Source: Phallusia mammillata
Taxonomy: Eukaryota
Reading direction: 5' to 3'
Length of the DNA stretch: 64,000 nucleotides
NCBI GenBank assembly: GCA_965637545.1
Contig: OZ281501.1
Span: 6,758,001 to 6,822,000 of the forward strand
The position numbers were made by a program, and so were the translations under genes. Below, in pieces: positions 29,151-52,087 of this stretch. How positions within the stretch are numbered: position 1 is the stretch's first letter; every line of letters starts with the position of its first letter. Under the pieces are notes generated by a model. It was not told the origin of the DNA. It did no database searches and saw only the letters and a list, made by a program, of their open reading frames with translations.

Positions 29151-31000
29151 CAAGTCAAGTCAAGTCAAGTCAAAATTTTATTTGCATTGTCACTAAATCA
29201 ATTGTCATTGATGAACATTTTAGTAAACACAGCAAGGACACCGAAAAAAACCGTTGGTTATCGAGTCAAGTGTCCCGTTATTTGAATGATGCTTGAAGTA
29301 TTGTGGGTTTTGTTCTGCCGTAGGATCGCAACCGACCGCACGAACCTGGCGGGGTACGTCCGGTTGCATAAGACGGTGGTTGAACCCGCGGGTTCTGCTG
29401 GCCAAATGAAACCCGCCTAAACGGAAACACCAGCTCGGTTCCTCGGAACGTTTCCTGTGATCCCGTAGGCAGACCCGGGTGTCCCGAGGACAGTTCGTTG
29501 CGATGGAAGTTGGTTCTGAAGTGTCCGTCGCTTATCTCCTCTGCTTCCTAGGTTTCGTAGGATCGATGGCGGGGATCTCCGATGTTGAACGGTGTGGAAG
29601 TGATGACTGTTCTCGTCCCAGGTGGCAGATCTGAAAAAGTCAAATCCTACGGCAGTACTTTGCCCTTTTATGTGTGACTACGTAATGTTGTTTATGCACA
29701 AAATAAACAAATATTAAAAAGCGATAACAAAAAAATAACACTGGAATAAAACTGTGGGAAAGGAAATAAAAACAAAAAATCAGAGTATGTGGAGAAGGAA
29801 AAGGAAACAAGGCTATAAATTAATTGTTTAGGGGGGGCTGGGGGCCTGGACTTCGAGATGTATTAGTTCGAGATTGATGGTATTGCATCAGTAGATGCGA
29901 ACGGTATTTTTTCCTAAAGGAGGAGCGTGCGAGCGACTTTGTGACGTGTGGTATTTCTTCCCATACTTTTGGACCTCGATAGCAAATTGACCTTGAGCCA
30001 ACGGCGGTGTTTGCGCGGGGATAAAAATAATTCTGACTGTCGGCCCTTCTGGTGTTGTGAGCATGGACTGACGAAATAGGTGTAAACAGGGTGTTGTATG
30101 TGGAAGGTAGTGCACCAGAATGAAACGCGTGAACCAGTTTGGCTAATTCTAGTTTGTAGATGTCTCTAATTTTCAGAAGGCGCATATGGTAGTATATGGG
30201 GGTGGCGCGACATCGGTAGGTACTCCGAGTAATAGCTCGCAAGATTTTATTGTGTTTAATGTTGAGGTTATGCAGTGATGCGGTGCAGCCACTGCCCCAA
30301 GCGGCGACGGCATATTGCAGATGGGAGTATGCAAATGAGTAATAAATAATTCGGAGAAACTTTTCTCCAAGGTAATCGCGAAGCTTATACACTATACCGC
30401 AAGCTTGAGCCAATTTTCTTTCGACATACGTTATATGGTGTTTCCAATTTAACTGATCGTCGATGTATACTCCCAGGTATTTTGTTTTCGTCGATCGCTG
30501 TACTTGTTGCGATCCCATGAATATGGAAAACTTGTCGGAAAAAGAACGCTTGCTAGGACGAAACAGTAGGTACGTTGTTTTACTGGTGTTTAGTGATAAT
30601 TTGTTGTGTCGCATCCAATTGTCCACGTGTGTGAGTTCCTTGTTTACGTTTTCCTGCAGATCAGTTAAAGACTCTGATGACATGCAAAGGCACGTGTCAT
30701 CCGCAAATAATTTGGTTGTGAATTGGGATGCAGTGGGGAGGTCATTAATATAAAGGGAAAACAGAAGAGGAGCCAAGGAGGAACCTTGAGGACAACCGCA
30801 CGTAACGTATTGAAATTGTGATGTTACATGTGATATGCGTGTGCATTGCCTGCGGTTACGTAAGTAGCTACATAGTAATTGTAAGGGGCCTCCCCGTATT
30901 CCATACAGGTGCTCCAACTTCCACAACAAAACCTTGTGATCGACGGTGTCAAACGCTTTTGATAAGTCCAGGAAATAGCTATTGATTAATACAAGACGTT
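29151..31000 (-). mobile_element. 5'-truncated non-LTR retrotransposon (L2/CR1 group, Crack/Daphne-like)
   Basis: RT ORF is followed by about 650 nt of 3' sequence, AATAAA (minus, 29182-29177) and a (GACTT)n tail at 29151-29173. Flanked on both sides by pieces of a MITE family also seen at 33903-34260. Confidence 0.88.
29820..30984 (-). CDS. Reverse transcriptase C-terminal part of LINE ORF2 (no endonuclease or N-terminal RT)
   Basis: FLDLSKAFDTVDH, GCPQGSSLAPLLFSLYINDL, FADDT, KYLGVYIDDQLNWKHHI in an uninterrupted frame (track ORF 29820-31061). Confidence 0.9.
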
Positions 31001-32129
31001 GATTAATTATGTTTGGTGATAACCTGGAATTAGTTGCGTATAGTTTTTGAAAATGTATCACGAAAAAGCTTATCTATGTTATTGGCCAATACTTGTGGGT
31101 TATTTCATACCACTTCTCCAAATTTTGTACTAAAGAAATATATTTCAAGCCAATATGCTTGTTGTGGATGCTTTCTTTATCCTCATTGGACTGGTCCACG
31201 AGACTTATTTAAACCATTGCTGTAATAGGAAGCCAACGCATGTCTTTTTGTTCAGCTTTTTCCTTTCAATGTTGATGAAAACATGAATTTAAGCGGGGTA
31301 TAGAAAACAAGAAAGTATACAGAAAAGGAAAAAAAACTCTTAAACCGGTTGCGTTTTGTTGCAACGGTGATAAAACCAGTAATGAGGCAAATGCAGAGCA
31401 TATCAAAACTGACAAACCTTGCATTATAACGCTGCCCGATACATCAGTGTAATGCTGCAGGGCCCAATTTCCGTTTCGTACCAATCGGCTGTTGATCACA
31501 ACAAAGCTGTTGTTCCTAGAAACCATGAATTATTACTGCAAAACAACCGTACACAATAGCGTGAAAACAATTAGATCCAACTAACAATAGACCATAACAA
31601 TCCTTCGTGTTCGCGAAACGGATGACAGCATTACACCTTATGTATTGAAAATGCACAAATGCTGAACACGTGTACATTGGATACCGCCTCCTACAACGAT
31701 TGAATATTCTATTCTCAAGGGTACTATAGTCAGTCGCAAAGAGATATCCAAGTGTGCTTGTTTGTGCCGGGTGTTATGAGTATTCATGACGAACATTGTT
31801 AGGAGCTGTGCTATCACATTGAAGTTGCAAAAAAGTTTTTTTAACTATTGTTTGCGAGTTTATCGTGAAAAATTTATTAGTGTGGTCTGATCTTACGTTT
31901 AGAAACACTGTTCCAAGGCAAAGTTTAAAAGCGACTAAAAAGCTGCAATAGTGACACCTAGTGGTATGCTTACCGACTATCTGACTTAATTAGCGCTTGT
32001 TTTGTATTGATATGGGAAACATAACTGGTTAAATATTACATAACACGTATTGTCAACTTCAAGATTAAATACGAACCATATGAGGTTTATCTTCAAACAT
32101 TTGCAATAGGTTGTATAAGAAGTTCAAAA

Positions 32130-35100
32130 ATGTTCACAAACTTCGCACTGGGTTTTCTTTTCTTTGCTGGGATCCTACAGTACAAGCAAGCAAATGGTGA
32201 GTGCTCGAAATATTCAAATGGCTGTTTTGAACACTTGCACGTTTTAATTTCGCAATCAAATACGATGTAAAGTTTAAACCTCGCAGCACGTTTGTGACAC
32301 GCAGTTTGGTTATCATTTTTAAGCCCTGTGTCTCGACCAGAAAGAGAATGTTTATTTAACATCAAATAGATTGTTGTTGAAACTAAATGCTCTGATGGTA
32401 AGTTTTTAACTATTAATTTTGTTGCAGGATGCAGTAATTGGTGTTTTGCAACTGGAAAATGTTATCCTCCACAGCCTGGTGATTGCACAGATTGTCTTAA
32501 GAATTACTGTGGTATGTGTTAATGAGATTTTATAACTTATGAAATTAATAACTTATCTTTCAAGTTAATTTTCATTTAGTCGCCAGTTTTAAACAAGGCA
32601 AAAAGACAAAAATATTATTCTCACAAATTTTGTAAGTAGTAAGACAAAAACATTATAAAATCAAACAATACACGACAAATTACAATCTATTGCTACAAAA
32701 AAACTTTATAATGAAGCCCAGCACTCTTCAAAGGGTACATAAAATATTTAAGGGAACTGCAACGGAGAAGCTACATCAAAACATTCATATTAAAACACAG
32801 ATATTAGATATAACTTAACAAACTTGAATCGAGCTAAAATGTTACTTGACAAAAAGTACTATTTCTTGTCATGTATCCTTGGGGGCTATCTTTAACGAAT
32901 ATTTTTGTCCTAAACAGGCATGGATTTCTACACGCCATTTCAAAGCAACTTCGCAAGTCAGTGCATATTTAGAGCAATGAAACGGCCATCACAATGTAAG
33001 GCAGTGTGTGGTGGTGTAGCCACCAACAAGCTGAAAAAAAGGCGAAATAAATGCAACAACTGTATCCGTCCTTGCATTGGTAAGTCTTGTCCCTTTAAAA
33101 ACTTTTTACAGCAGAATTTTTTTACTTTATGGTGACGAAACTAAGTTTTTTTGCAAACCACAGTTGATGTAAGTTTAATATAAGTTTGCACAATTAAATG
33201 TCAGGATGCGTTTACGCGTTTATCACTACACATATCGCCGCTTGTTGTTTGATGTTGCACAAATGTTTTGAGCAAAGAGCGTTGGGTTGGCTTGTTAAGT
33301 TTTTTTTCGCACTTTAATATAACGTCTAAAGCTAACGCAGCCTCTTTCTACAAATGCATAATAAAGGCTTTAAATCGAATCAAGACCGTCTTCCGCCAGT
33401 ATTAGCATTATCGTTCAGCAGAACAACGGTTTAAAAATCTCGCCTGGTGGGACTGTTCCCTGGCAAATGGGCCTGCCGCTCTACCAACTGAGCTATGTCG
33501 TCTAAGTTCGAAGCCTGTTAAAAGCCAGCCTCTTATACAGAGTCGCAAATTCGAAAAATAATTAAATAAACGCCCTTCGTAGCTTTAAAGAAAAAAAAAT
33601 GACTTTTTTATTGCAGAAGAGGCTCTTGAAAATCCGGACAACTACTGTCCTTCACTATATCCACCGGTTCCACCTGTACAACAAACTCAGATTCCGGGTT
33701 CACTGCCAAACCTCATTAGCCAGATGATGGAGGGTCAAGATTCACACACCAATGATACAACAGCACCAGTTCCATGCGAAGTTTGCTATGGGAACGACAG
33801 CTGCCCAACCATCCAAGAGTTGTTATCTTACCCTCAGTTTTGTCTGGAGTACGTTGCTCTGAAATGCAAAGGTAACCTGTCGTACTTTTTAATTGTATAC
33901 ATCAGTGGTTCTCGACTCGTTTCAGGCCATGTACCGCCATTCCTATTAAATAAATATCGTGGACCAGTCCATTGTTAAATATGGATAACAAAAGCATCCA
34001 TGGATACAGCTACCATGTCGCCTTGAAATATATTCTTTAAAGAATGAACTCAATACAGAATTTAATCTAATAAAGAAATAACAAATTACAACAAATGGAC
34101 AATAACTCGCATTAGCTTTTATTGTACTTACTATTCAATAAATTATATGCAACTAGGCTATTTTCAATTTAACACTAAGTATAGTTAACGGCCTATGGAC
34201 CACCCAAAAAGTCGTCAAGGACCACCAATGATCCATGGACTACCAAAAAAGAGAACCACAAGTCCAAATATTCTGTTTTTGTTGTTATTTGATGACACTT
34301 TGACAATAATTTTGACTGAAATGTATTTATAAAGTCCTGATGCTTTAAACTTACAAACTTGTATTGTGGTCGGAAATTGTTAGGTTTGGGTTTGACTTGT
34401 GAACGCTAAATGGACATGTTTAAAGTTATCTATTACATTGCAAAATCTTCCAAACACAAGATTTTTGATCTCGTTTTCAAGGCTTTACCATGGTATAAGA
34501 CTTTATTATCTTTTTAGTCGCAATAATAGTTCGCTTTACCAGTAAATATTTTTGACAGCTTTCAAACAGCACATCACTGGAGGAACCCATGCTAACATTA
34601 GCACCGCTCAGACTTGGGAATGCATCATAAACGCTTGGAACGATTCCTGCTCGGAATGTCCATACATCAATCCAGATCGCTTTATAAACTGTCAAGCTTG
34701 TCTTGAAACGTGCACAGGTACTTTCATTGTATTAGTAAACTTTACAAAACGGTAATATCTAGTAACACCAGACTGACATTTAGCTACTTTTGGATAAGAG
34801 GCGCAAAGAGCACCTTTACCCATTTAAACCGATATATCTCTAAAAATGCTGACGGTTAGGGCTATTTGGTTTGTGTCAAGATATTATCATTAAAAATTCT
34901 GTTAAACTAACTTAAAAACTTCCTAACCTCACCCCTCTCTGACGGATACAAAATCTGTCAAAATTTAGCTAACTGTGGGTCGGCCGTGTGTTATGGTGTT
35001 AGTAGGTCTCCCTTCTAACTGACAATATAAAGATATCTTAGTTGGTTACGTAAGACACGCAGTTAACAATATCAGTTTTGTTTTTGGCAATGCTATCTGT

Positions 35101-35833
35101 ACAACATTTTTTATTATGCAGCTGCTTTGGATTGTGCTGTTGGGTGTGTTCTCAATCGTGGCATGTACCCGATGGTAATACCATGCGACAAATGTGCAGC
35201 GTTATGCAGAGGTTTGTTGTGCGTTATATGTTAAATCTCAATGACCAAGTGTATAAACTGTGTAACAAATATTTTAGTGAAAATATGTTGACACCAATGA
35301 TGTACAGTAAAAACGAGGCCAGATTTGATAAAATTCGCATTCATCAAATTTGCAGCAATTTATTGAGGATTTTGTTACATTTTACTTTTAATCGGTTTGC
35401 CTCAAATTTTACTTGATTCTTGATTCAAATACTGTTTTGAAGTAAATCGTCTCACGTGATTTTTATATTTAGAATTAGGTACAACACCCCAGGAAGAAGT
35501 GGACTGCATGAATCAAAATTGCCCGGATTGCATTGAATGTGACGAATGCTATCTGGCTTGTGAAGCCGGTAAGTTTTCGCTTATGTGTGATAAATAAATC
35601 AGACAAACAATAGGATGCTTACGTTTAAACCGGCCCTTTTACAGTCTCTATGCTAAATTTCCGCCCAATACGTGTTCATTTATCCCGTGTTGACGACCTT
35701 TTGTCTGGGGTCTAGAATTTTACATTTCATCTGTAAAATGCGTTTGGTAACATGTCTGGCCTAACGCTGACAGCGTTAATTTTGTGTTTCAGATGGCTAT
35801 GCAGAAAATCTCTGCAAATGTATATGGTATTGA
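32130..35833 (+). CDS. Secreted Cys-rich modular protein, 317 aa, 8 exons, unknown family (vanabin/metallothionein-like Cys spacing)
   Basis: Exons 32130-32196 (signal MFTNFALGFLFFAGILQYKQANG), 32428-32511, 32918-33079, 33617-33871, 34559-34717, 35122-35211, 35473-35568 and 35793-35833. Every intron is GT-AG phase 1 and the frame is open to TGA (954 nt). 37 Cys, with five 6-Cys exons. Confidence 0.82.
33440..33502 (-). pseudogene. tRNA-derived sequence (tRNA pseudogene or SINE head)
   Basis: Minus strand reads GACGACATAGCTCAGTTGGTAGAGCGGCAGG...GGGAACAGTCCCACCAGGCG: intact A-box/D-arm, but the T-loop lacks GTTCRA. Confidence 0.6.
33903..34260. mobile_element. hAT-type MITE in an intron of the Cys-rich gene
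   Basis: Begins CAGTGGTTCTC, ends GAGAACCACA. Its ends match, in reverse complement, the sequences flanking the LINE (about 29088-29150 and 31185-31225). Confidence 0.55.
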
Positions 35834-40279: not shown

Positions 40280-42485
<2,206 letters not shown>

Positions 42486-46609: not shown

Positions 46610-47005
46610 TGTAGGGGCTTTATGGTCCTGATGACGTCGTACTTATTACTACGGAAGTATCTTTCGCTGTAGATGTTTATACTTTAAGTCCCTGGCTATC
46701 TGAGCTACTGCTTGTCTGGGCTTAGTCCAACAAGGAAGACGGCGTTTTAACCTTGATGTTAGTTTATTGCGTTAAGAGAGTTATACGTTCTGACCATGAG
46801 AGTTACAACACATGTGAATATATAGTGACAAAGGTGACGATGACGCAACTGTACAATTGTGCTTAAGGTGCTAAACAGCGACAACTGGCATTTAAGATCG
46901 AGTACTGAAAAGGTGACGATGACGAAATACAACGTTCATGCAATCACAGTAACTCGTATGATAATATACGCGCTTATGTATAACTTCAATACACGATACT
47001 CCACA
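46610..47005 (-). repeat. 3' LTR
   Basis: Direct repeat of 51692-52087. Minus strand carries a TATATA box and a downstream AATAAA. Confidence 0.95.
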
Positions 47006-47777
47006 CAGGCCACCCCGCCGAAAAGTGTTTTTCCGATTTATGTCGATTTTGACATGTGTGATTCTTTGCCTTCTGCTTCTTGGTTCGTTCCAGTCGCGAG
47101 TGTCTTTTCGTTTTGATTGTTTGTTGTTCATTCTTGATGACCAGTTGTTGAACGTTGTTGATTTTGATTCGATCGTGATTCGGTGTTGTGGAGATGACAT
47201 CAAATCTTTGATTTGTCCAAATGTCGTTCGATTGAGATAGGTCGACGTTCTTATGATAAAGATGACGATAAACAGTAATGTGACGTGACGTAGAATTACG
47301 TTGAGCTGCGTGGCGAGTTTGACGATGTGGTAGCCAATGACATTGATGTTGTTAGATATCCTGCATAGTCAATCTCCGATCGACTTTGCATGACATCTGT
47401 CAACATCGTCGTAGTTTTGATGATGATCGTCACAGTGTTAGTCGGCCTCGTGAACAACCTGGTAAGAATGTTTTGATTCATCGTGATGAAGAACACGGAT
47501 GTTGGCGATGGAGTCTCGTTAGTTTGTTGAACTTCTTCTAGCAGATGGTTCGTTTGTGTGATCATGGGGAAGACTGAGTTGGAGAGTCGAGTATTGATTC
47601 AAAGCAATTTATCATGCATCAACTTTCAACGTTCATTTCACATGCGGCAAAATAACTTAATTTTAATTTGATCGTATGTTAATAATGAAACATTGTTTTA
47701 CAAACATGCAACAAGTTAGTATATGTCAACACTGCAAACATCACAAGTAAATAGTGGAAACTCGGTGACGAATTTGG

Positions 47778-49595
47778 TTACTCGACGTTCCGTTGGAGAT
47801 CATGGAGTTCGAAATTGTTTCCAACGTTTTCACCGACGTCCCCTATTACATTGTCATGTTTGTGTAACAGTTTGGTTTGAACTAAACCAAACACCCAAAA
47901 TCCATAATGTTTCAGAGCTATGCCAGTTAACACTATTCCCCAAAAGCATGCTAAGAACAGTGCTATGGTTACCAGAAAGTTTATAAATGGCGATGTTATA
48001 GAGCTAATAACATGCAAAAACACGTTCTTTGTTGCTGCGTCAATCTTGTCCGTGATGTATCCTACGTCCGCTTCTTCTGATGGGTCAAGGTTAGATTGCA
48101 TGTATTGTGACAGCTGTTCGTTGTGTAATCGAACTTCTGTCAGTGTCATTAGCATGCTGTTCATATCCTCGATTCCGCTGCTCGATTTCGGGAATTCATC
48201 CATGAAGGATTGATAGTCCGTTGTCCGATGGCTGAAGTGGATTGGCGATAGAGTTGGGACGATTTCGTGGACGTTCGAGTCCACGTGCGTCAATGTGTAG
48301 TTGTCGAATACAACGAATTCTTCTTCAATTCGGAATGACAGTACTCGTCCCGGTTGATAAGTTTCAAGAAATTTGACGTTTTGATAAACAAAACCATCGC
48401 GGTATAGTTGACCGACTATTCTTGTTCCGGTTGAGTCGATGTATTCGATTAGTGGCCTTGTAGCGAAAAGGTCACCATGGCGAAGGCTATGAAGAATTGT
48501 TCCATTGATTTCTTCGCAGGTGATTTCGGTCATTAGGTCGGATGTTGTGATTGCTGCTCGATGTCCTCCAAGTACTTGGCTAATGATTTCACCAGGATAT
48601 TGACGGGACAGCAGTGAGTAGACCGTTGATAGTAGAGACTGAATTTGGCACTCTACATAGTGTATGTCGTTCGTCATGTTTGTGATGCTGGTTATCAAAG
48701 CATCGGTAGCTTCGTTCAGGATTAGACCTTGAACTCCGTCTTTCTGCGAACGTTGCATAATGTCCAGCCGATTCCTCTTTGTGTTGATAGTACAGTTTTT
48801 AGGTACAACGATAATTCCTCCGGCACAAAAAGCGTGCGGGGAGTAGCAAGATGCAACCTCCTTGGGACATTCAAAAGTGTGGTGAATGCTGAGGCCAAGA
48901 TCGGGTATTTCGAGGCGTCGAGGTTGATTCACGGAATCGCCGTGATGCTGGATCATCTCGTGGGTGCCTATGGGATATGTAATGGCACAGTCGACGTTTT
49001 TAGGAACTGACCAAACGAAAGTACGAGTTCCTACACTGCAAAAACCTTGATGGACGTTGCAGCTTGACATAATCCCCAAAGCGCTACGAAGCTTTTTGTT
49101 GATGGGATCATAATAAATAGTCGACTTGGTCAGTATAGCGTTGTTGACTGACCCCACGTTGCTAGTTGGCCATTTGTATTCTATTTTTATTTGATTGTTA
49201 GTAGAATACAATGTATCGCTTTTTTGCAACAATCTGCCGATAATTGGTGTAGATAAAGTACGTTTCCATTCTTCACAAGTGCCAGGAGTAGGAGCGGGAG
49301 CGGAAATTGTATTTTTTGTGTGGAACTTTCCACCGAAGAAATAGTAATGCGACTCGTAGCTAGTGGTGTATATTTGACACATGGCAACATTTATTTTAAT
49401 TTCCCCTTTGGACGGGTTGAACACGTCTACAGTACATTTGTCTTCTAAAGGGTGTTTGTAGTTCTTCTTACAAGGCATGGGTTTGGGAATGAAATATTCC
49501 CCTTTGGAAAGTGTGTCGTGGCATAGCTTGAACTTGTGTGTTGAGCTGTGCGTAGTTGTGATGGAAAGAAATAGGATTAAACTGAAATAAATCAT
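47778..49595 (-). CDS. env: Envelope glycoprotein, class III fusogen-like (herpesvirus gB / chuvirus G type), 605 aa
   Basis: Signal peptide MIYFSLILFLSITTTHSS; Cys-rich ectodomain; N-glycosylation sequons NCT, NMT, NGT, NYT; KRNR before a long helix; gB-like stretch ECQIQ...YPGEIISQVLG..DLM....C...SLR...ATRPLIEY...GQL...VFDNYT; C-terminal TM FINFLVTIALFLACFWGIVLTGIAL. Confidence 0.85.
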   Translation of the reverse strand: MIYFSLILFLSITTTHSSTHKFKLCHDTLSKGEYFIPKPMPCKKNYKHPLEDKCTVDVFNPSKGEIKINVAMCQIYTTSYESHYYFFGGKFHTKNTISAPAPTPGTCEEWKRTLSTPIIGRLLQKSDTLYSTNNQIKIEYKWPTSNVGSVNNAILTKSTIYYDPINKKLRSALGIMSSCNVHQGFCSVGTRTFVWSVPKNVDCAITYPIGTHEMIQHHGDSVNQPRRLEIPDLGLSIHHTFECPKEVASCYSPHAFCAGGIIVVPKNCTINTKRNRLDIMQRSQKDGVQGLILNEATDALITSITNMTNDIHYVECQIQSLLSTVYSLLSRQYPGEIISQVLGGHRAAITTSDLMTEITCEEINGTILHSLRHGDLFATRPLIEYIDSTGTRIVGQLYRDGFVYQNVKFLETYQPGRVLSFRIEEEFVVFDNYTLTHVDSNVHEIVPTLSPIHFSHRTTDYQSFMDEFPKSSSGIEDMNSMLMTLTEVRLHNEQLSQYMQSNLDPSEEADVGYITDKIDAATKNVFLHVISSITSPFINFLVTIALFLACFWGIVLTGIALKHYGFWVFGLVQTKLLHKHDNVIGDVGENVGNNFELHDLQRNVE

Positions 49596-49600
49596 GATGT

Positions 49601-51595
49601 TTAATCTCTAAATCTGAGTGGTCGTCTGACAACTCGACCGGTTCGGGTTTTGATGATTGGTGCAGGAGGAGTAGGTGCAGCGGTTGATGATTCTGGTGTT
49701 CGATCAACCTCGATATCGTGTGCTGCGGCTGTTTCGCTTCCTTCAGATTTGCCTTCAAAAATATCTGGACAAATTAAAGGATTATTTCGAGATAGGACAA
49801 AGTTCGTTTTTGAAATGAATTTTGAACTTGTACCTTTTCGATTACCATACACAACCTTTGACTTGTATGTAATGGGATCTCTAAAGACAGTTTTTAGTTG
49901 CGTTGTTGGATAACGACTTTTAGTTGTTAAACATACCTCAGGATCTAAACCATTCGGTTTATAAATTGGTCTTTTACGCTTGGGTAAAGATGGTGATTTA
50001 ACAGTTTTCTTGCTAGATTGTGAAATGAGTTTCCTCCTGCGGATGTCAATTAAAAGATTGTAATGACGTAGAAAATCAGCACCAAGGATTGGTTGGCGTA
50101 CAGCACAAACTAAAAATCTCCATCTGAAAGATCTGGAAAGATTAAAATTGACTGACAATCGTTTTTCACCGAACGATGTGAAGCCCTTTCCTGCGGCACC
50201 GTACAAGTAAACAGATTTTTTGTTGTAAAAACCTTTTGCAAACCATGCAGGTACGATGCTGACGTCACTTCCGCTGTCCACCAAAAAACTTAAATTGTTG
50301 TTTTTATCTTTTATGGTAAAGGTTTTTCTCTTACTTGCTGGACGACGCCCACGGTAAGTTATTGATTGGGCCCGAAGCTGTTGGTGTTCGTTCGACCACA
50401 AAATACAGTTCGGTCTGCACTTACTTGCGTTCATTCCATAGATAGAATGATAGTAGCACAACCGATGCGACGCAGGTTGATCTCTCAGTGGAGGAAATTT
50501 ACTTCTAGATACTGGAACATATTTAGCTTTTCCAGCATAGTTACGATTCGGTCAAGATTCAAATGATCTATATTCCGACCGTAAGGGTGTAGAAGTAGTC
50601 TGCGGACTTACTTGAGGCTGGCCCGCATTATTTAATAATGACATGGTTTGCATCGTCTTTATGGCATCCATGTCATTGGATAGCTTTGCGAAGCGCCTTT
50701 CGAAATCATCATAACCATCGTCTGATTTGTTAATCTGGTGATGGGATGATTGCGGTTGCTCTGTAGTTCCTCGAGAAGTGGAAACAGGAGTTTGCGACTG
50801 TACAAATAAATGTGGAGAATTTAGCATCATTACAGAATCGGCAATTTCTGCTAGACTGTCTAAATCCTGATGAATACTTGCCGATAGAACAAGTCTGACC
50901 TCCTTTGGCAGTCGATCTAAAAACAGTTTTTTTAATAAGGCCACAGCCGATGGACCTAAATCGCCATAACCAGCCAATAACAACTTCATTTCGTAAAGTA
51001 GTTCGCTGGGTCTCTTATTGCAAGGTTCGCCAGCACTTAACAATTGGTTTAGGCGCATCATTTCCCTCGTCTCATAAAACTTAAGCAAATCCTGCTTTAA
51101 GTGTGAATAGGGATGATCGGAAGTTCGGTTCAGAATAAGATGACCAATCTTCGCAATCTGATCCTCTCCCAATCTTGGTATGATTGCAGCGAATTTTTCC
51201 TGCTCGCTGTAAATCTGGTTAGCTTCGAATATGGTTTCAACGGTTGCAAACCATACAGCACACCGTTCGGCCCAGAACTTAGGGATGTTCAATTTTGCAA
51301 GCAGCATACCTCTGTTAGGTGGTGGCACGGCAGTTTCGCACCCGGTTTGTTGATTTGTAGATAAATCCGGGTAAACCACCTTGATATCGGACGGTTGACT
51401 GATGGGTGAACTAGACCCACTGTCACAATCGTCTTGACGATTGTTTGTTTGAAACGGCCCAGGATGACGAGAATCCTTGGGTAATTGTCCAGTACCACTG
51501 TAAGAGGGCAGCTCAGTGCTTCTTATGATGGGAGTAGAAGTCAGTTTTGTCTTTTTGGATTTACCAAAAGGCAGAAGATTATGCATGTAGGACAT
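49601..51595 (-). CDS. Gag (CsRn1-type with CHCC nucleocapsid) plus retropepsin, one frame interrupted by a single TGA at 50554-50552
   Basis: Gag LNIPKFW...WFATVETIF...QEKF...PYSHLK..L...LNQLL......RPSELL; after the TGA, CYYHSIYGMNASKCRPNC (Cx2Hx9Cx3C); protease FLVDSGSDVS...ILGADFLRHYNLLID; tail TRTGRVVRRPLRFRD. The two track ORFs differ by 1170 nt, so they share a frame. Confidence 0.88.
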
Positions 51596-51668
51596 ACTTA
51601 AGTATAAATAATTGTAAATAGTCAACAACAAAATAATACCTCACCGTAATTGAGTATGGTCCGTCAAG

Positions 51669-51686
51669 ATCACGTCGGGTTCGCCA
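51669..51686 (-). promoter_or_regulatory. Primer-binding site, tRNA-Trp-like
   Basis: TGGCGAACCCGACGTGAT, 5 nt downstream of the 5' LTR. Complementary to ATCACGTCGGGTTCGCCA, which resembles the 3' end of eukaryotic tRNA-Trp as I recall it (ATCACGTCGGGGTCACCA). Confidence 0.8.
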
Positions 51687-51691
51687 ATTTA

Positions 51692-52087
51692 TGTAGGGGC
51701 TTTATGGTCCTGATGACGTCGTACTTATTACTACGGAAGTATCTTTCGCTGTAGATGTTTATACTTTAAGTCCCTGGCTATCTGAGCTACTGCTTGTCTG
51801 GGCTTAGTCCAACAAGGAAGACGGCGTTTTAACCTTGATGTTAGTTTATTGCGTTAAGAGAGTTATACGTTCTGACCATGAGAGTTACAACACATGTGAA
51901 TATATAGTGACAAAGGTGACGATGACGCAACTGTACAATTGTGCTTAAGGTGCTAAACAGCGACAACTGGCATTTAAGATCGAGTACTGAAAAGGTGACG
52001 ATGACGAAATACAACGTTCATGCAATCACAGTAACTCGTATGATAATATACGCGCTTATGTATAACTTCAATACACGATACTCCACA
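51692..52087 (-). repeat. 5' LTR
   Basis: Direct repeat of 46610-47005, followed on the minus strand by the PBS. Confidence 0.95.

What the first reader, a model, noticed from the sequence alone, without database searches (positions are those of the whole stretch)
32130..35833. Unannotated-looking secreted protein built from exon-encoded six-cysteine modules (vanabin-like spacing)
Seen: a signal peptide, then modules each on its own phase-1/phase-1 exon, most ending in CxxCxxx(x)C (CTDCLKNYC, CNNCIRPC, CQACLETC, CDKCAALC, CDECYLAC). 37 Cys in total (an odd number); one strongly basic module (KLKKRRNK) and an acidic last module. None of it appears as a long ORF, so it is easily missed. Known: symmetric phase-1 exons mark shuffled extracellular modules; ascidian vanabins are small proteins with repeated C-x(2-4)-C motifs. 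Inference: a lineage-specific metal-binding, defence or tunic protein family with a possibly new disulfide-rich domain.
Basis: partly seen in the sequence, partly recalled or inferred. Interest (0 to 1): 0.7.

Follow-up and report, generated by a model that had tools for sequence, protein, structure and literature searches.

The report
Orphan sea-squirt 37-cysteine secreted protein gene
This is an intact eight-exon sea-squirt gene for a secreted, disulfide-rich protein; it is the one scattered member of an undescribed family that the scan had already met as a tandem array on the same chromosome, it is not a vanabin, and its function is unknown.

Summary
Eight exons (32130-35833, + strand) join in one frame through seven canonical GT-AG introns. 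All six internal exons are phase 1/phase 1. The product is 317 aa with a signal peptide and 37 Cys (0/6/6/6/6/5/6/2 per exon).

The gene is not unique. The genome holds seven full paralogues and two partial copies in a tandem array on the same contig, 5.6 Mb upstream, with the same exon order. The scan had already reported that array on other DNA (note s1-349157). All 35 Cys of exons 2-7 align with the paralogues, although overall identity is only 38-46%. The pattern of one basic module and several acidic ones is also shared. This argues for a real gene under selection.

No exon matches Pfam. The exon-3 and exon-5 modules match no solved structure. The exon-3 profile found nothing among 1.84 billion representative proteins.

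Vanabin kinship is not supported. The genome has five true vanabin exons on another contig. Our modules share with them only the short C-x2-C-[LI]-x2-C motif.

No module occurs in any other gene, so exon shuffling is not shown. Function (defence or recognition, matrix, metal handling) remains inference.

The parts
32130..32196 (+). Exon 1: start codon and signal peptide (22 codons plus 1 base; a 12-residue hydrophobic core, then Q-Y-K-Q-A-N-G)
   Evidence: coordinates, GT donor. (in-frame stop upstream at 32022, with no earlier ATG). (paralogues have a homologous exon 1 ending ...E-Y-Q-Q-T-N).
32428..32511 (+). Exon 2: module with 6 Cys (C-x3-C-x5-C-x7-C-x2-C-x4-C), phase 1/1
   Evidence: It is 41-59% identical to the paralogues. 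The profile finds only the 8 family genes.
32918..33079 (+). Exon 3: basic module with 6 Cys (net +10; holds KLKKRRNK), phase 1/1
   Evidence: The profile finds 8 copies in the genome and none among 1.84 billion representatives.
33617..33871 (+). Exon 4: one Cys, then a Pro-rich acidic linker with two N-glycosylation sequons, then a 5-Cys module; phase 1/1
   Evidence: In paralogues E and F the linker holds (G-P-P) repeats.
34559..34717 (+). Exon 5: short linker with N-I-S and N-D-S sequons, then a 6-Cys module ending C-x2-C-x3-C; phase 1/1
   Evidence: AlphaFold2 predicts a two-helix hairpin at low confidence (pLDDT 55).
35122..35211 (+). Exon 6: 5-Cys module. The place of the 'missing' Cys is Met before a conserved Y-P, and it is Cys in paralogue B. 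Phase 1/1.
35473..35568 (+). Exon 7: acidic 6-Cys module (net -8), C-x4-C-x2-C-x2-C-x2-C-x3-C; phase 1/1
35793..35833 (+). Exon 8: short tail with C-x-C and an aromatic C-terminus, then stop TGA
   Evidence: Homologous tails (C-x-C, ending in W/Y) follow exon 7 in paralogues A, B and partial copy P1.

Best explanation
Shown: this is an intact eight-exon gene for a 317-aa precursor with a signal peptide, and the mature protein of about 294 aa carries 37 Cys. It is the only dispersed member of a gene family confined, in this genome, to contig C8. It diverged early from the rest. The other members are seven full genes and two partial copies in a tandem array 5.6 Mb upstream. Inferred: the protein is exported, N-glycosylated on its Pro-rich linkers, and folded into a string of six small disulfide-stapled modules that are probably helical. 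Their C-x2-C-x3-C motifs would put three Cys on one face of a helix. One module is strongly basic and three are acidic, and this pattern is kept across the family. The odd Cys count is also a family trait, so one thiol is probably free for a covalent link. Most likely mode of action (inference, roughly 40%): it is not an enzyme but an extracellular binding protein used in defence or recognition in blood or at the body surface. The basic module would bind polyanions, and the rest would evolve fast outside the Cys scaffold. It is not a vanabin.
For: The exon chain, phases and Cys count come. All 35 Cys of exons 2-7 align, while identity is 38-46% overall and 26-38% outside the shared Cys. DNA similarity to the array is limited to 36 nt inside exon 3, so only the coding sense is kept. 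The signal-peptide exon and the tail exon are homologous in the paralogues. The charge pattern is conserved: exon 3 is +4 to +10, exon 4 is -1 to -8, exon 5 is -3 to -8, and exon 7 is -1 to -8. Five module profiles find nothing else in the 240-Mb genome. There is no Pfam, PDB or Atlas match, and the exon-3 profile found no representative-library match. Helices are predicted in both modules that were folded. The earlier scan note s1-349157 reports that the array is transcribed; I did not check this.
Against: The gene lies between a reverse-transcriptase remnant and other repeats, away from its family. The structure models are of low confidence (pLDDT 55-57), so the helical, stapled picture is weak. 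Nothing in the data tells defence from matrix, metal or gamete roles. The protein libraries plainly lack this species' own proteins, so the absence of hits says little about other sea squirts.
Confidence: 0.65

Rival explanations
1. It is a structural protein of the tunic, mucus or another extracellular matrix. Chains would assemble through the opposite charges of the basic and acidic modules and be locked by the one unpaired Cys.
For: The basic/acidic module pattern and the odd Cys count are conserved across the family. The linkers are Pro-rich and carry glycosylation sequons. In paralogues E and F the linker holds five G-P-P triplets.
Against: The window's own linker has no collagen-like triplets. 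There is no matrix domain. Divergence outside the Cys is high, which is more usual for recognition or defence proteins. No expression site is known.
Confidence: 0.22
2. It is a distant vanabin relative or functional analogue: a metal-binding or metal-reducing protein (V, Cu, Fe) of a vanadium-handling sea squirt.
For: The motif C-x2-C-[LI]-x2-C is shared with this genome's own vanabins. One module is Lys/Arg-rich, and vanabins bind V(IV) through Lys/Arg (PMC9486056). The genome does encode vanabins.
Against: PF11437 does not match any exon or any family locus. hhalign probability is 4-10% and covers 10-13 columns only, no better than module against module. A PDB profile search finds 1VFI with the true vanabins but not with our modules. 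Vanabins have an 18-Cys core of about 90 aa. In this genome about 70 positions of that core sit on one exon, not on 6-Cys exon modules. Most of our modules are acidic.
Confidence: 0.07
3. It is a silent or decaying stray copy: a duplicate that left the array, sits among transposon remnants and is no longer expressed.
For: There is no RNA evidence. A reverse-transcriptase remnant lies 1 kb upstream and LTR-element notes lie downstream. Some array copies do show damage: a frame break in exon 5 of E, and a lost Cys and an odd donor in D.
Against: All eight exons are open, all 14 splice sites are canonical and all family Cys are kept. This holds even though divergence is so old that no intron similarity and almost no DNA similarity remains. 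A dead copy of that age would be broken.
Confidence: 0.06

Closest known systems
The scan's own 'orphan sea-squirt 37-cysteine secreted protein array' (note s1-349157; contig C8, 1.13-1.20 Mb)
   Same: Same eight-exon plan, same phases, same 37-Cys scaffold, a homologous signal peptide and tail, and the same charge pattern.
   Different: This copy lies alone, 5.6 Mb away. It is only 38-46% identical to every array member, whereas the young clade C-G is 58-78% identical within itself. It has the most basic exon-3 module and the most acidic exon-7 module, and its linker has no G-P-P repeats.
Vanabins (Pfam PF11437; Vanabin2 structure 1VFI)
   Same: Small Cys-rich proteins that are presumably helical, from the same animal group. 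They share a C-x2-C-x3-C motif. One of our modules is Lys/Arg-rich.
   Different: No profile match was found. Vanabins have an 18-Cys core of about 90 aa rather than six different 5-6-Cys exon modules. The gene structure differs. Our protein is three times longer, mostly acidic, and carries a signal peptide and glycosylation sequons.
Other orphan Cys-module families noted by the scan in this genome (s1-392397, 12-Cys repeat proteins; s1-408679, 36-Cys region fused to a trypsin)
   Same: Secreted products, about 36 Cys, six exon-encoded modules, and no catalogued domain.
   Different: None of five module profiles from our family reaches any locus outside C8, so no sequence kinship is detectable. 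Our modules are not a clear A-B repeat.
Rusticalin Cys-rich repeats (Styela rustica, PMC6339383)
   Same: An ascidian secreted protein with exon-sized Cys-rich repeats.
   Different: Its spacing is C-x6-C-x6/7-C-x8-C-x7-CC, it is beta-defensin-like, and it is fused to a peptidase domain. It is unrelated to the spacings seen here.

Membership tests
Vanabin (PF11437) | Sequence match to the Pfam Vanabin-2 model above its 25-bit cut-off | tested here: not met
   No exon matched even at E<=10. The genome-wide PF11437 scan lists five exons over the cut-off on contig C1 and none on C8.
Vanabin (PF11437) | Core of about 90 aa with 18 (16 in VanabinX) conserved Cys forming nine disulfides (PMC9486056) | tested here: not met
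   Our modules have 5-6 Cys in 27-53 aa with other spacings. hhalign against this genome's vanabins aligns only 10-13 columns, at 4-10% probability.
Vanabin (PF11437) | Bow-shaped four-helix fold as in 1VFI | tested here: inconclusive
   The AlphaFold2 models of the exon 3 and exon 5 modules are helical but have pLDDT 55-57. Foldseek against the PDB gave no match. The PDB sequence profile search finds 1VFI with true vanabins but not with our modules.
Vanabin (PF11437) | V(IV) binding through Lys/Arg, and V(V) reductase activity | not testable with these tools
   Only exon 3 is basic (+10), and the other modules are neutral or acidic. This needs biochemistry.
Orphan 37-Cys family of contig C8 (scan note s1-349157) | Eight exons in the same order with phase-1 boundaries | tested here: met
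   tblastn hits in the order 2-3-4-5-6-7 in seven paralogues, with splice sites placed. Exons 1 and 8 were recovered in several of them.
Orphan 37-Cys family of contig C8 (scan note s1-349157) | Shared Cys scaffold | tested here: met
   35 of 35 Cys of exons 2-7 of the window gene fall in columns that are Cys in all, or all but one, of the paralogues.
Orphan 37-Cys family of contig C8 (scan note s1-349157) | Significant and exclusive profile matches | tested here: met
   The window exons score E 1e-11 to 1e-25 against the family profiles, and no locus outside the family passes E 0.4.
Orphan 37-Cys family of contig C8 (scan note s1-349157) | Transcribed and spliced | not testable with these tools
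Metallothionein | Small cytosolic protein without a signal peptide or aromatic residues, whose Cys bind metal as thiolates | tested here: not met
   The sequence shows a signal peptide, 317 aa and many F/W/Y residues.
Catalogued extracellular Cys-rich modules (EGF, furin-like, TNFR, Kazal, ShK and others in Pfam) | Match to a Pfam model | tested here: not met
   The exon-by-exon hmmscan at E<=10 gave only two chance-level rows, both far below their cut-offs.

The most novel reading that the evidence does not exclude
The family is a new disulfide-rich fold, specific to vanadium-handling sea squirts. It would act outside the cell in metal or redox chemistry, as an extracellular counterpart of the vanabins, using its C-x2-C-x3-C helices and its one free thiol. 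The old single-copy gene in this window would carry the ancestral function.
Probability: 0.06. Interest if true: 0.65.

Novelty: new variant of a known kind. Interest (0 to 1): 0.3.

Why it matters
Sea squirts are the closest invertebrate relatives of vertebrates, and their genomes hold many unannotated, short-exon genes for secreted cysteine-rich proteins. This gene shows that the 37-Cys family is older than its tandem array. A copy that separated long ago still keeps every cysteine, the exon plan and the charge pattern, so the scaffold is under selection and the family is worth an expression and binding study. It also removes a tempting but wrong label: it is not a vanabin. On its own it is a modest addition to a family the scan already knew.

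Tried and rejected

Everything was done exon by exon, by reference. Full-length searches, a full-length fold and the length-matched word search were therefore left out.

3. The search for homologous proteins was not run. Its length window (0.55-1.75 times the query) excludes full-length relatives of an exon peptide. In addition, the exhaustive search of the same collection with the exon-3 profile found nothing, not even this species' own product.

4. Internal repeat (A-B)x3 idea: exon 2 and exon 6 align Cys for Cys, with a shared Y-P. However, hhalign probability is 1%, and composition-matched shuffles reach the real scores in 6-17% of trials. The best case is exon 5 against exon 3, at about 2%. 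This is suggestive, not shown.

5. Structure: both AlphaFold2 jobs gave pLDDT 55-57. Foldseek against the PDB gave nothing, and I ran no further fold searches on such models.

6. The ESM Atlas gave no usable hit for either module tried.

7. Rusticalin-type repeats were rejected because the spacing differs. Two literature searches found no description of such a family.

8. tRNA or other RNA genes in the introns: none. An inverted-repeat element in intron 4: none.

Full report
**The observation**

Reading the window and rebuilding the chain by script gave eight exons on the + strand:
- 32130-32196
- 32428-32511
- 32918-33079
- 33617-33871
- 34559-34717
- 35122-35211
- 35473-35568
- 35793-35833

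All seven introns are GT...AG, with pyrimidine-rich acceptors. All six internal exons are multiples of three and are phase 1 at both ends. The coding length is 954 nt, which is 317 codons plus TGA.

Cys per exon is 0/6/6/6/6/5/6/2, which makes 37, and no junction codon is Cys. Exon 1 reads as a signal peptide, with a 12-residue uncharged hydrophobic core followed by Q-Y-K-Q-A-N-G. There is an in-frame stop upstream at 32022 and no earlier ATG. No exon lies in a plain ORF longer than 84 aa.

The exon-2 motif has five residues, not three or four, before its last Cys. Exon 6 has five Cys and exon 8 has two.

**The gene is not unique**

Six-frame searches of the window's own genome used exons 3, 4, 5 and 7. 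The genome is 240 Mb, and the window is contig C8:6758001-6822000. Hits fell only on the same contig, at 1.131-1.196 Mb.

I fetched that stretch and ran all exon peptides against it. This showed seven full paralogues (A-G) and two partial copies (exons 6-7 only). All are on the + strand with exon order 2-3-4-5-6-7. Phase-1 splice sites could be placed for most exons. Homologous signal-peptide exons and homologous tails (C-x-C, ending in aromatic residues) were also found in several paralogues.

Only after this did I read the scan's earlier notes. Note s1-349157 describes this array as a transcribed orphan family of 37-38-Cys secreted proteins. The scan therefore found this family before, on other DNA. 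The window gene is its one dispersed member.

**Is the window copy alive?**

- Per-exon alignments put all 35 Cys of exons 2-7 in columns that are Cys in all, or all but one, of the paralogues.
- Identity summed over exons is only 38-46% to every paralogue, and 26-38% outside the shared Cys. Array members C-G are 58-78% identical among themselves.
- At DNA level only 36 nt inside exon 3 still resemble the array, and no intron does.

The split is therefore old, yet every exon is open and every splice site is canonical. This is what purifying selection on a working gene looks like.

Net charge per module is also kept across the family:

| Exon | Family range | Window copy |
|---|---|---|
| 3 | +4 to +10 | +10 |
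| 4 | -1 to -8 | -8 |
| 5 | -3 to -8 | -3 |
| 7 | -1 to -8 | -8 |

Four N-glycosylation sequons sit in the exon-4 and exon-5 linkers. This is read directly from the translation and fits a secretory route.

The five-Cys state of exon 6 is shared by all copies but B. The odd Cys count is thus a family trait, and one thiol is probably unpaired.

Direct RNA evidence for this copy is lacking. 

**What the modules are**

- Exon-by-exon hmmscan against Pfam at E<=10 gave only two chance-level rows.
- Profiles of the exon-3 and exon-5 modules hit nothing meaningful among PDB sequences.
- The exon-3 profile found no protein at E<=0.001 among 1.84 billion representatives.
- The ESM Atlas gave nothing usable.

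There is a caveat. The library did not return even this species' own product, so it is largely blind to sea-squirt proteomes. A 53-position profile also needs roughly 40 bits or more to pass at that library size. 'No relatives' therefore means no catalogued or close relatives, not absence from other tunicates.

AlphaFold2 on the exon-3 and exon-5 family alignments predicts helices. For exon 5 it predicts a two-helix hairpin carrying the C-x2-C-x3-C motif. Confidence is only pLDDT 57 and 55, and Foldseek against the PDB found nothing.

No full-length search or fold was made.

**Vanabin test**

Pfam has a Vanabin-2 model (PF11437). In this genome it finds five tandem exons above its cut-off on contig C1, at 24.53-24.545 Mb. 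It finds nothing at this locus or in the array.

I aligned those five true vanabin exons (A2). As a positive control, this profile picks the Vanabin2 structure 1VFI as its top PDB hit, weakly, at E 0.029.

hhalign of our exon 2, 3 and 5 profiles against A2 aligns only 10-13 columns around C-x2-C-[LI]-x2-C, at 4-10% probability. This is no better than our modules score against each other.

According to PMC9486056, vanabins have an 18-Cys core, form nine disulfides, and bind V(IV) through Lys/Arg. Here only one module is basic, the Cys pattern differs, and the gene structure differs. The resemblance is a shared short helix-staple motif, not membership.

**Shuffling and internal repeats**

Profiles of exons 2, 3, 5, 6 and 7 each recover only the eight genes and the two partial copies. 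The modules are never seen in another gene or in another order. Symmetric phase-1 exons are present, but shuffling is not shown, and the gene duplicates as a whole.

A lead from note s1-392397, a 3 x [linker-A-B] plan in another orphan family, made me test for A and B module types. Exon 2 and exon 6 align Cys for Cys around a shared Y-P. The missing Cys of exon 6 falls where exon 2 and paralogue B have Cys. However, hhalign gives 1% probability, and composition-matched shuffles reach the real scores in 6-17% of trials. The best pair, exon 5 against exon 3, reaches about 2%. This stays a suggestion.

**Surroundings**

- Upstream, on the minus strand, lies a 413-codon ORF with a reverse-transcriptase domain (29820-31061).
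- Downstream, on the minus strand, lies an exon of a short-chain dehydrogenase (40768-41034).
- First-reader notes place an LTR element at 46610-52087.
- No further copy or fragment of the family lies in the window.
- No tRNA or Rfam family lies in the introns.

**How it most likely works**

Shown:
- an intact gene with a signal peptide;
- a conserved 37-Cys scaffold;
- a conserved charge pattern;
- a family confined to one contig;
- no catalogued domain;
- not a vanabin by any sequence test.

Inferred:
- The protein is exported, glycosylated and folded into six disulfide-stapled modules, probably helical, on Pro-rich linkers, with one free thiol.
- I rate an extracellular binding role in defence or recognition as most likely, at about 40%. 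The grounds are the fast change outside the Cys, the tandem expansion and the cationic module.
- A cross-linked matrix or tunic role comes next, at about 22%.
- A metal or redox role is at about 7%.
- A silent stray copy is at about 6%.

None of these can be told apart without expression and biochemistry.

**Verdict**

It is a new family of a familiar kind of protein that the scan had already met, so interest is modest (0.3).

Noticed in passing
G000:C1:24529897-24544553 (loci L035-L039): Five tandem exons match Pfam Vanabin-2 above its cut-off (28-38 bits). This is a true vanabin gene cluster, which marks the genome as a vanabin-bearing sea squirt. Each match covers about 70 of the model's 93 positions on a single exon.
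   Followed up: partly
G000:C5:24162127-24288491 (loci L040-L042): At least 18 copies of a 59-codon open frame, all with the same weak score, are spaced about 1.57 kb apart in two blocks. They give weak, sub-threshold Vanabin-2 scores (16 bits). This is a tandem repeat of unknown nature.
   Followed up: no
window 29820-31061 (-): A 413-codon ORF with a reverse-transcriptase domain (RVT_1, E 6e-20) lies 1 kb upstream of the gene. It is a retroelement remnant.
   Followed up: partly
window 40768-41034 (-): An ORF piece matches short-chain dehydrogenase (adh_short, E 1.5e-6). It is probably an exon of the next gene downstream.
   Followed up: no
window about 33430-33500, intron 3: By eye, the reverse complement of this stretch reads like the 5' half of a tRNA (box-A-like). 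ARAGORN and Rfam call nothing here. It may be a SINE fragment. I sent it to no further search.
   Followed up: partly
G000:C8:1148031, 1167578 and 1179987 (exon-4 donors of paralogues C, E and F; loci L030, L031, L033): These three array copies have GCAAGT where the others have GTAAGT, so they appear to use GC-AG introns.
   Followed up: partly
G000:C8:1167901-1168146 (paralogue E, exon 5) and 1153206-1154687 (paralogue D): E has a frame break inside exon 5. D lacks the first Cys of exon 2 and the usual start and donor of exon 4. Both are probably decaying array copies.
   Followed up: partly
G000:C8:1167285-1167578 and 1179679-1179987 (exon 4 of paralogues E and F): The linker holds about five G-P-P triplets, a short collagen-like run between Cys modules. 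The window copy has none.
   Followed up: no
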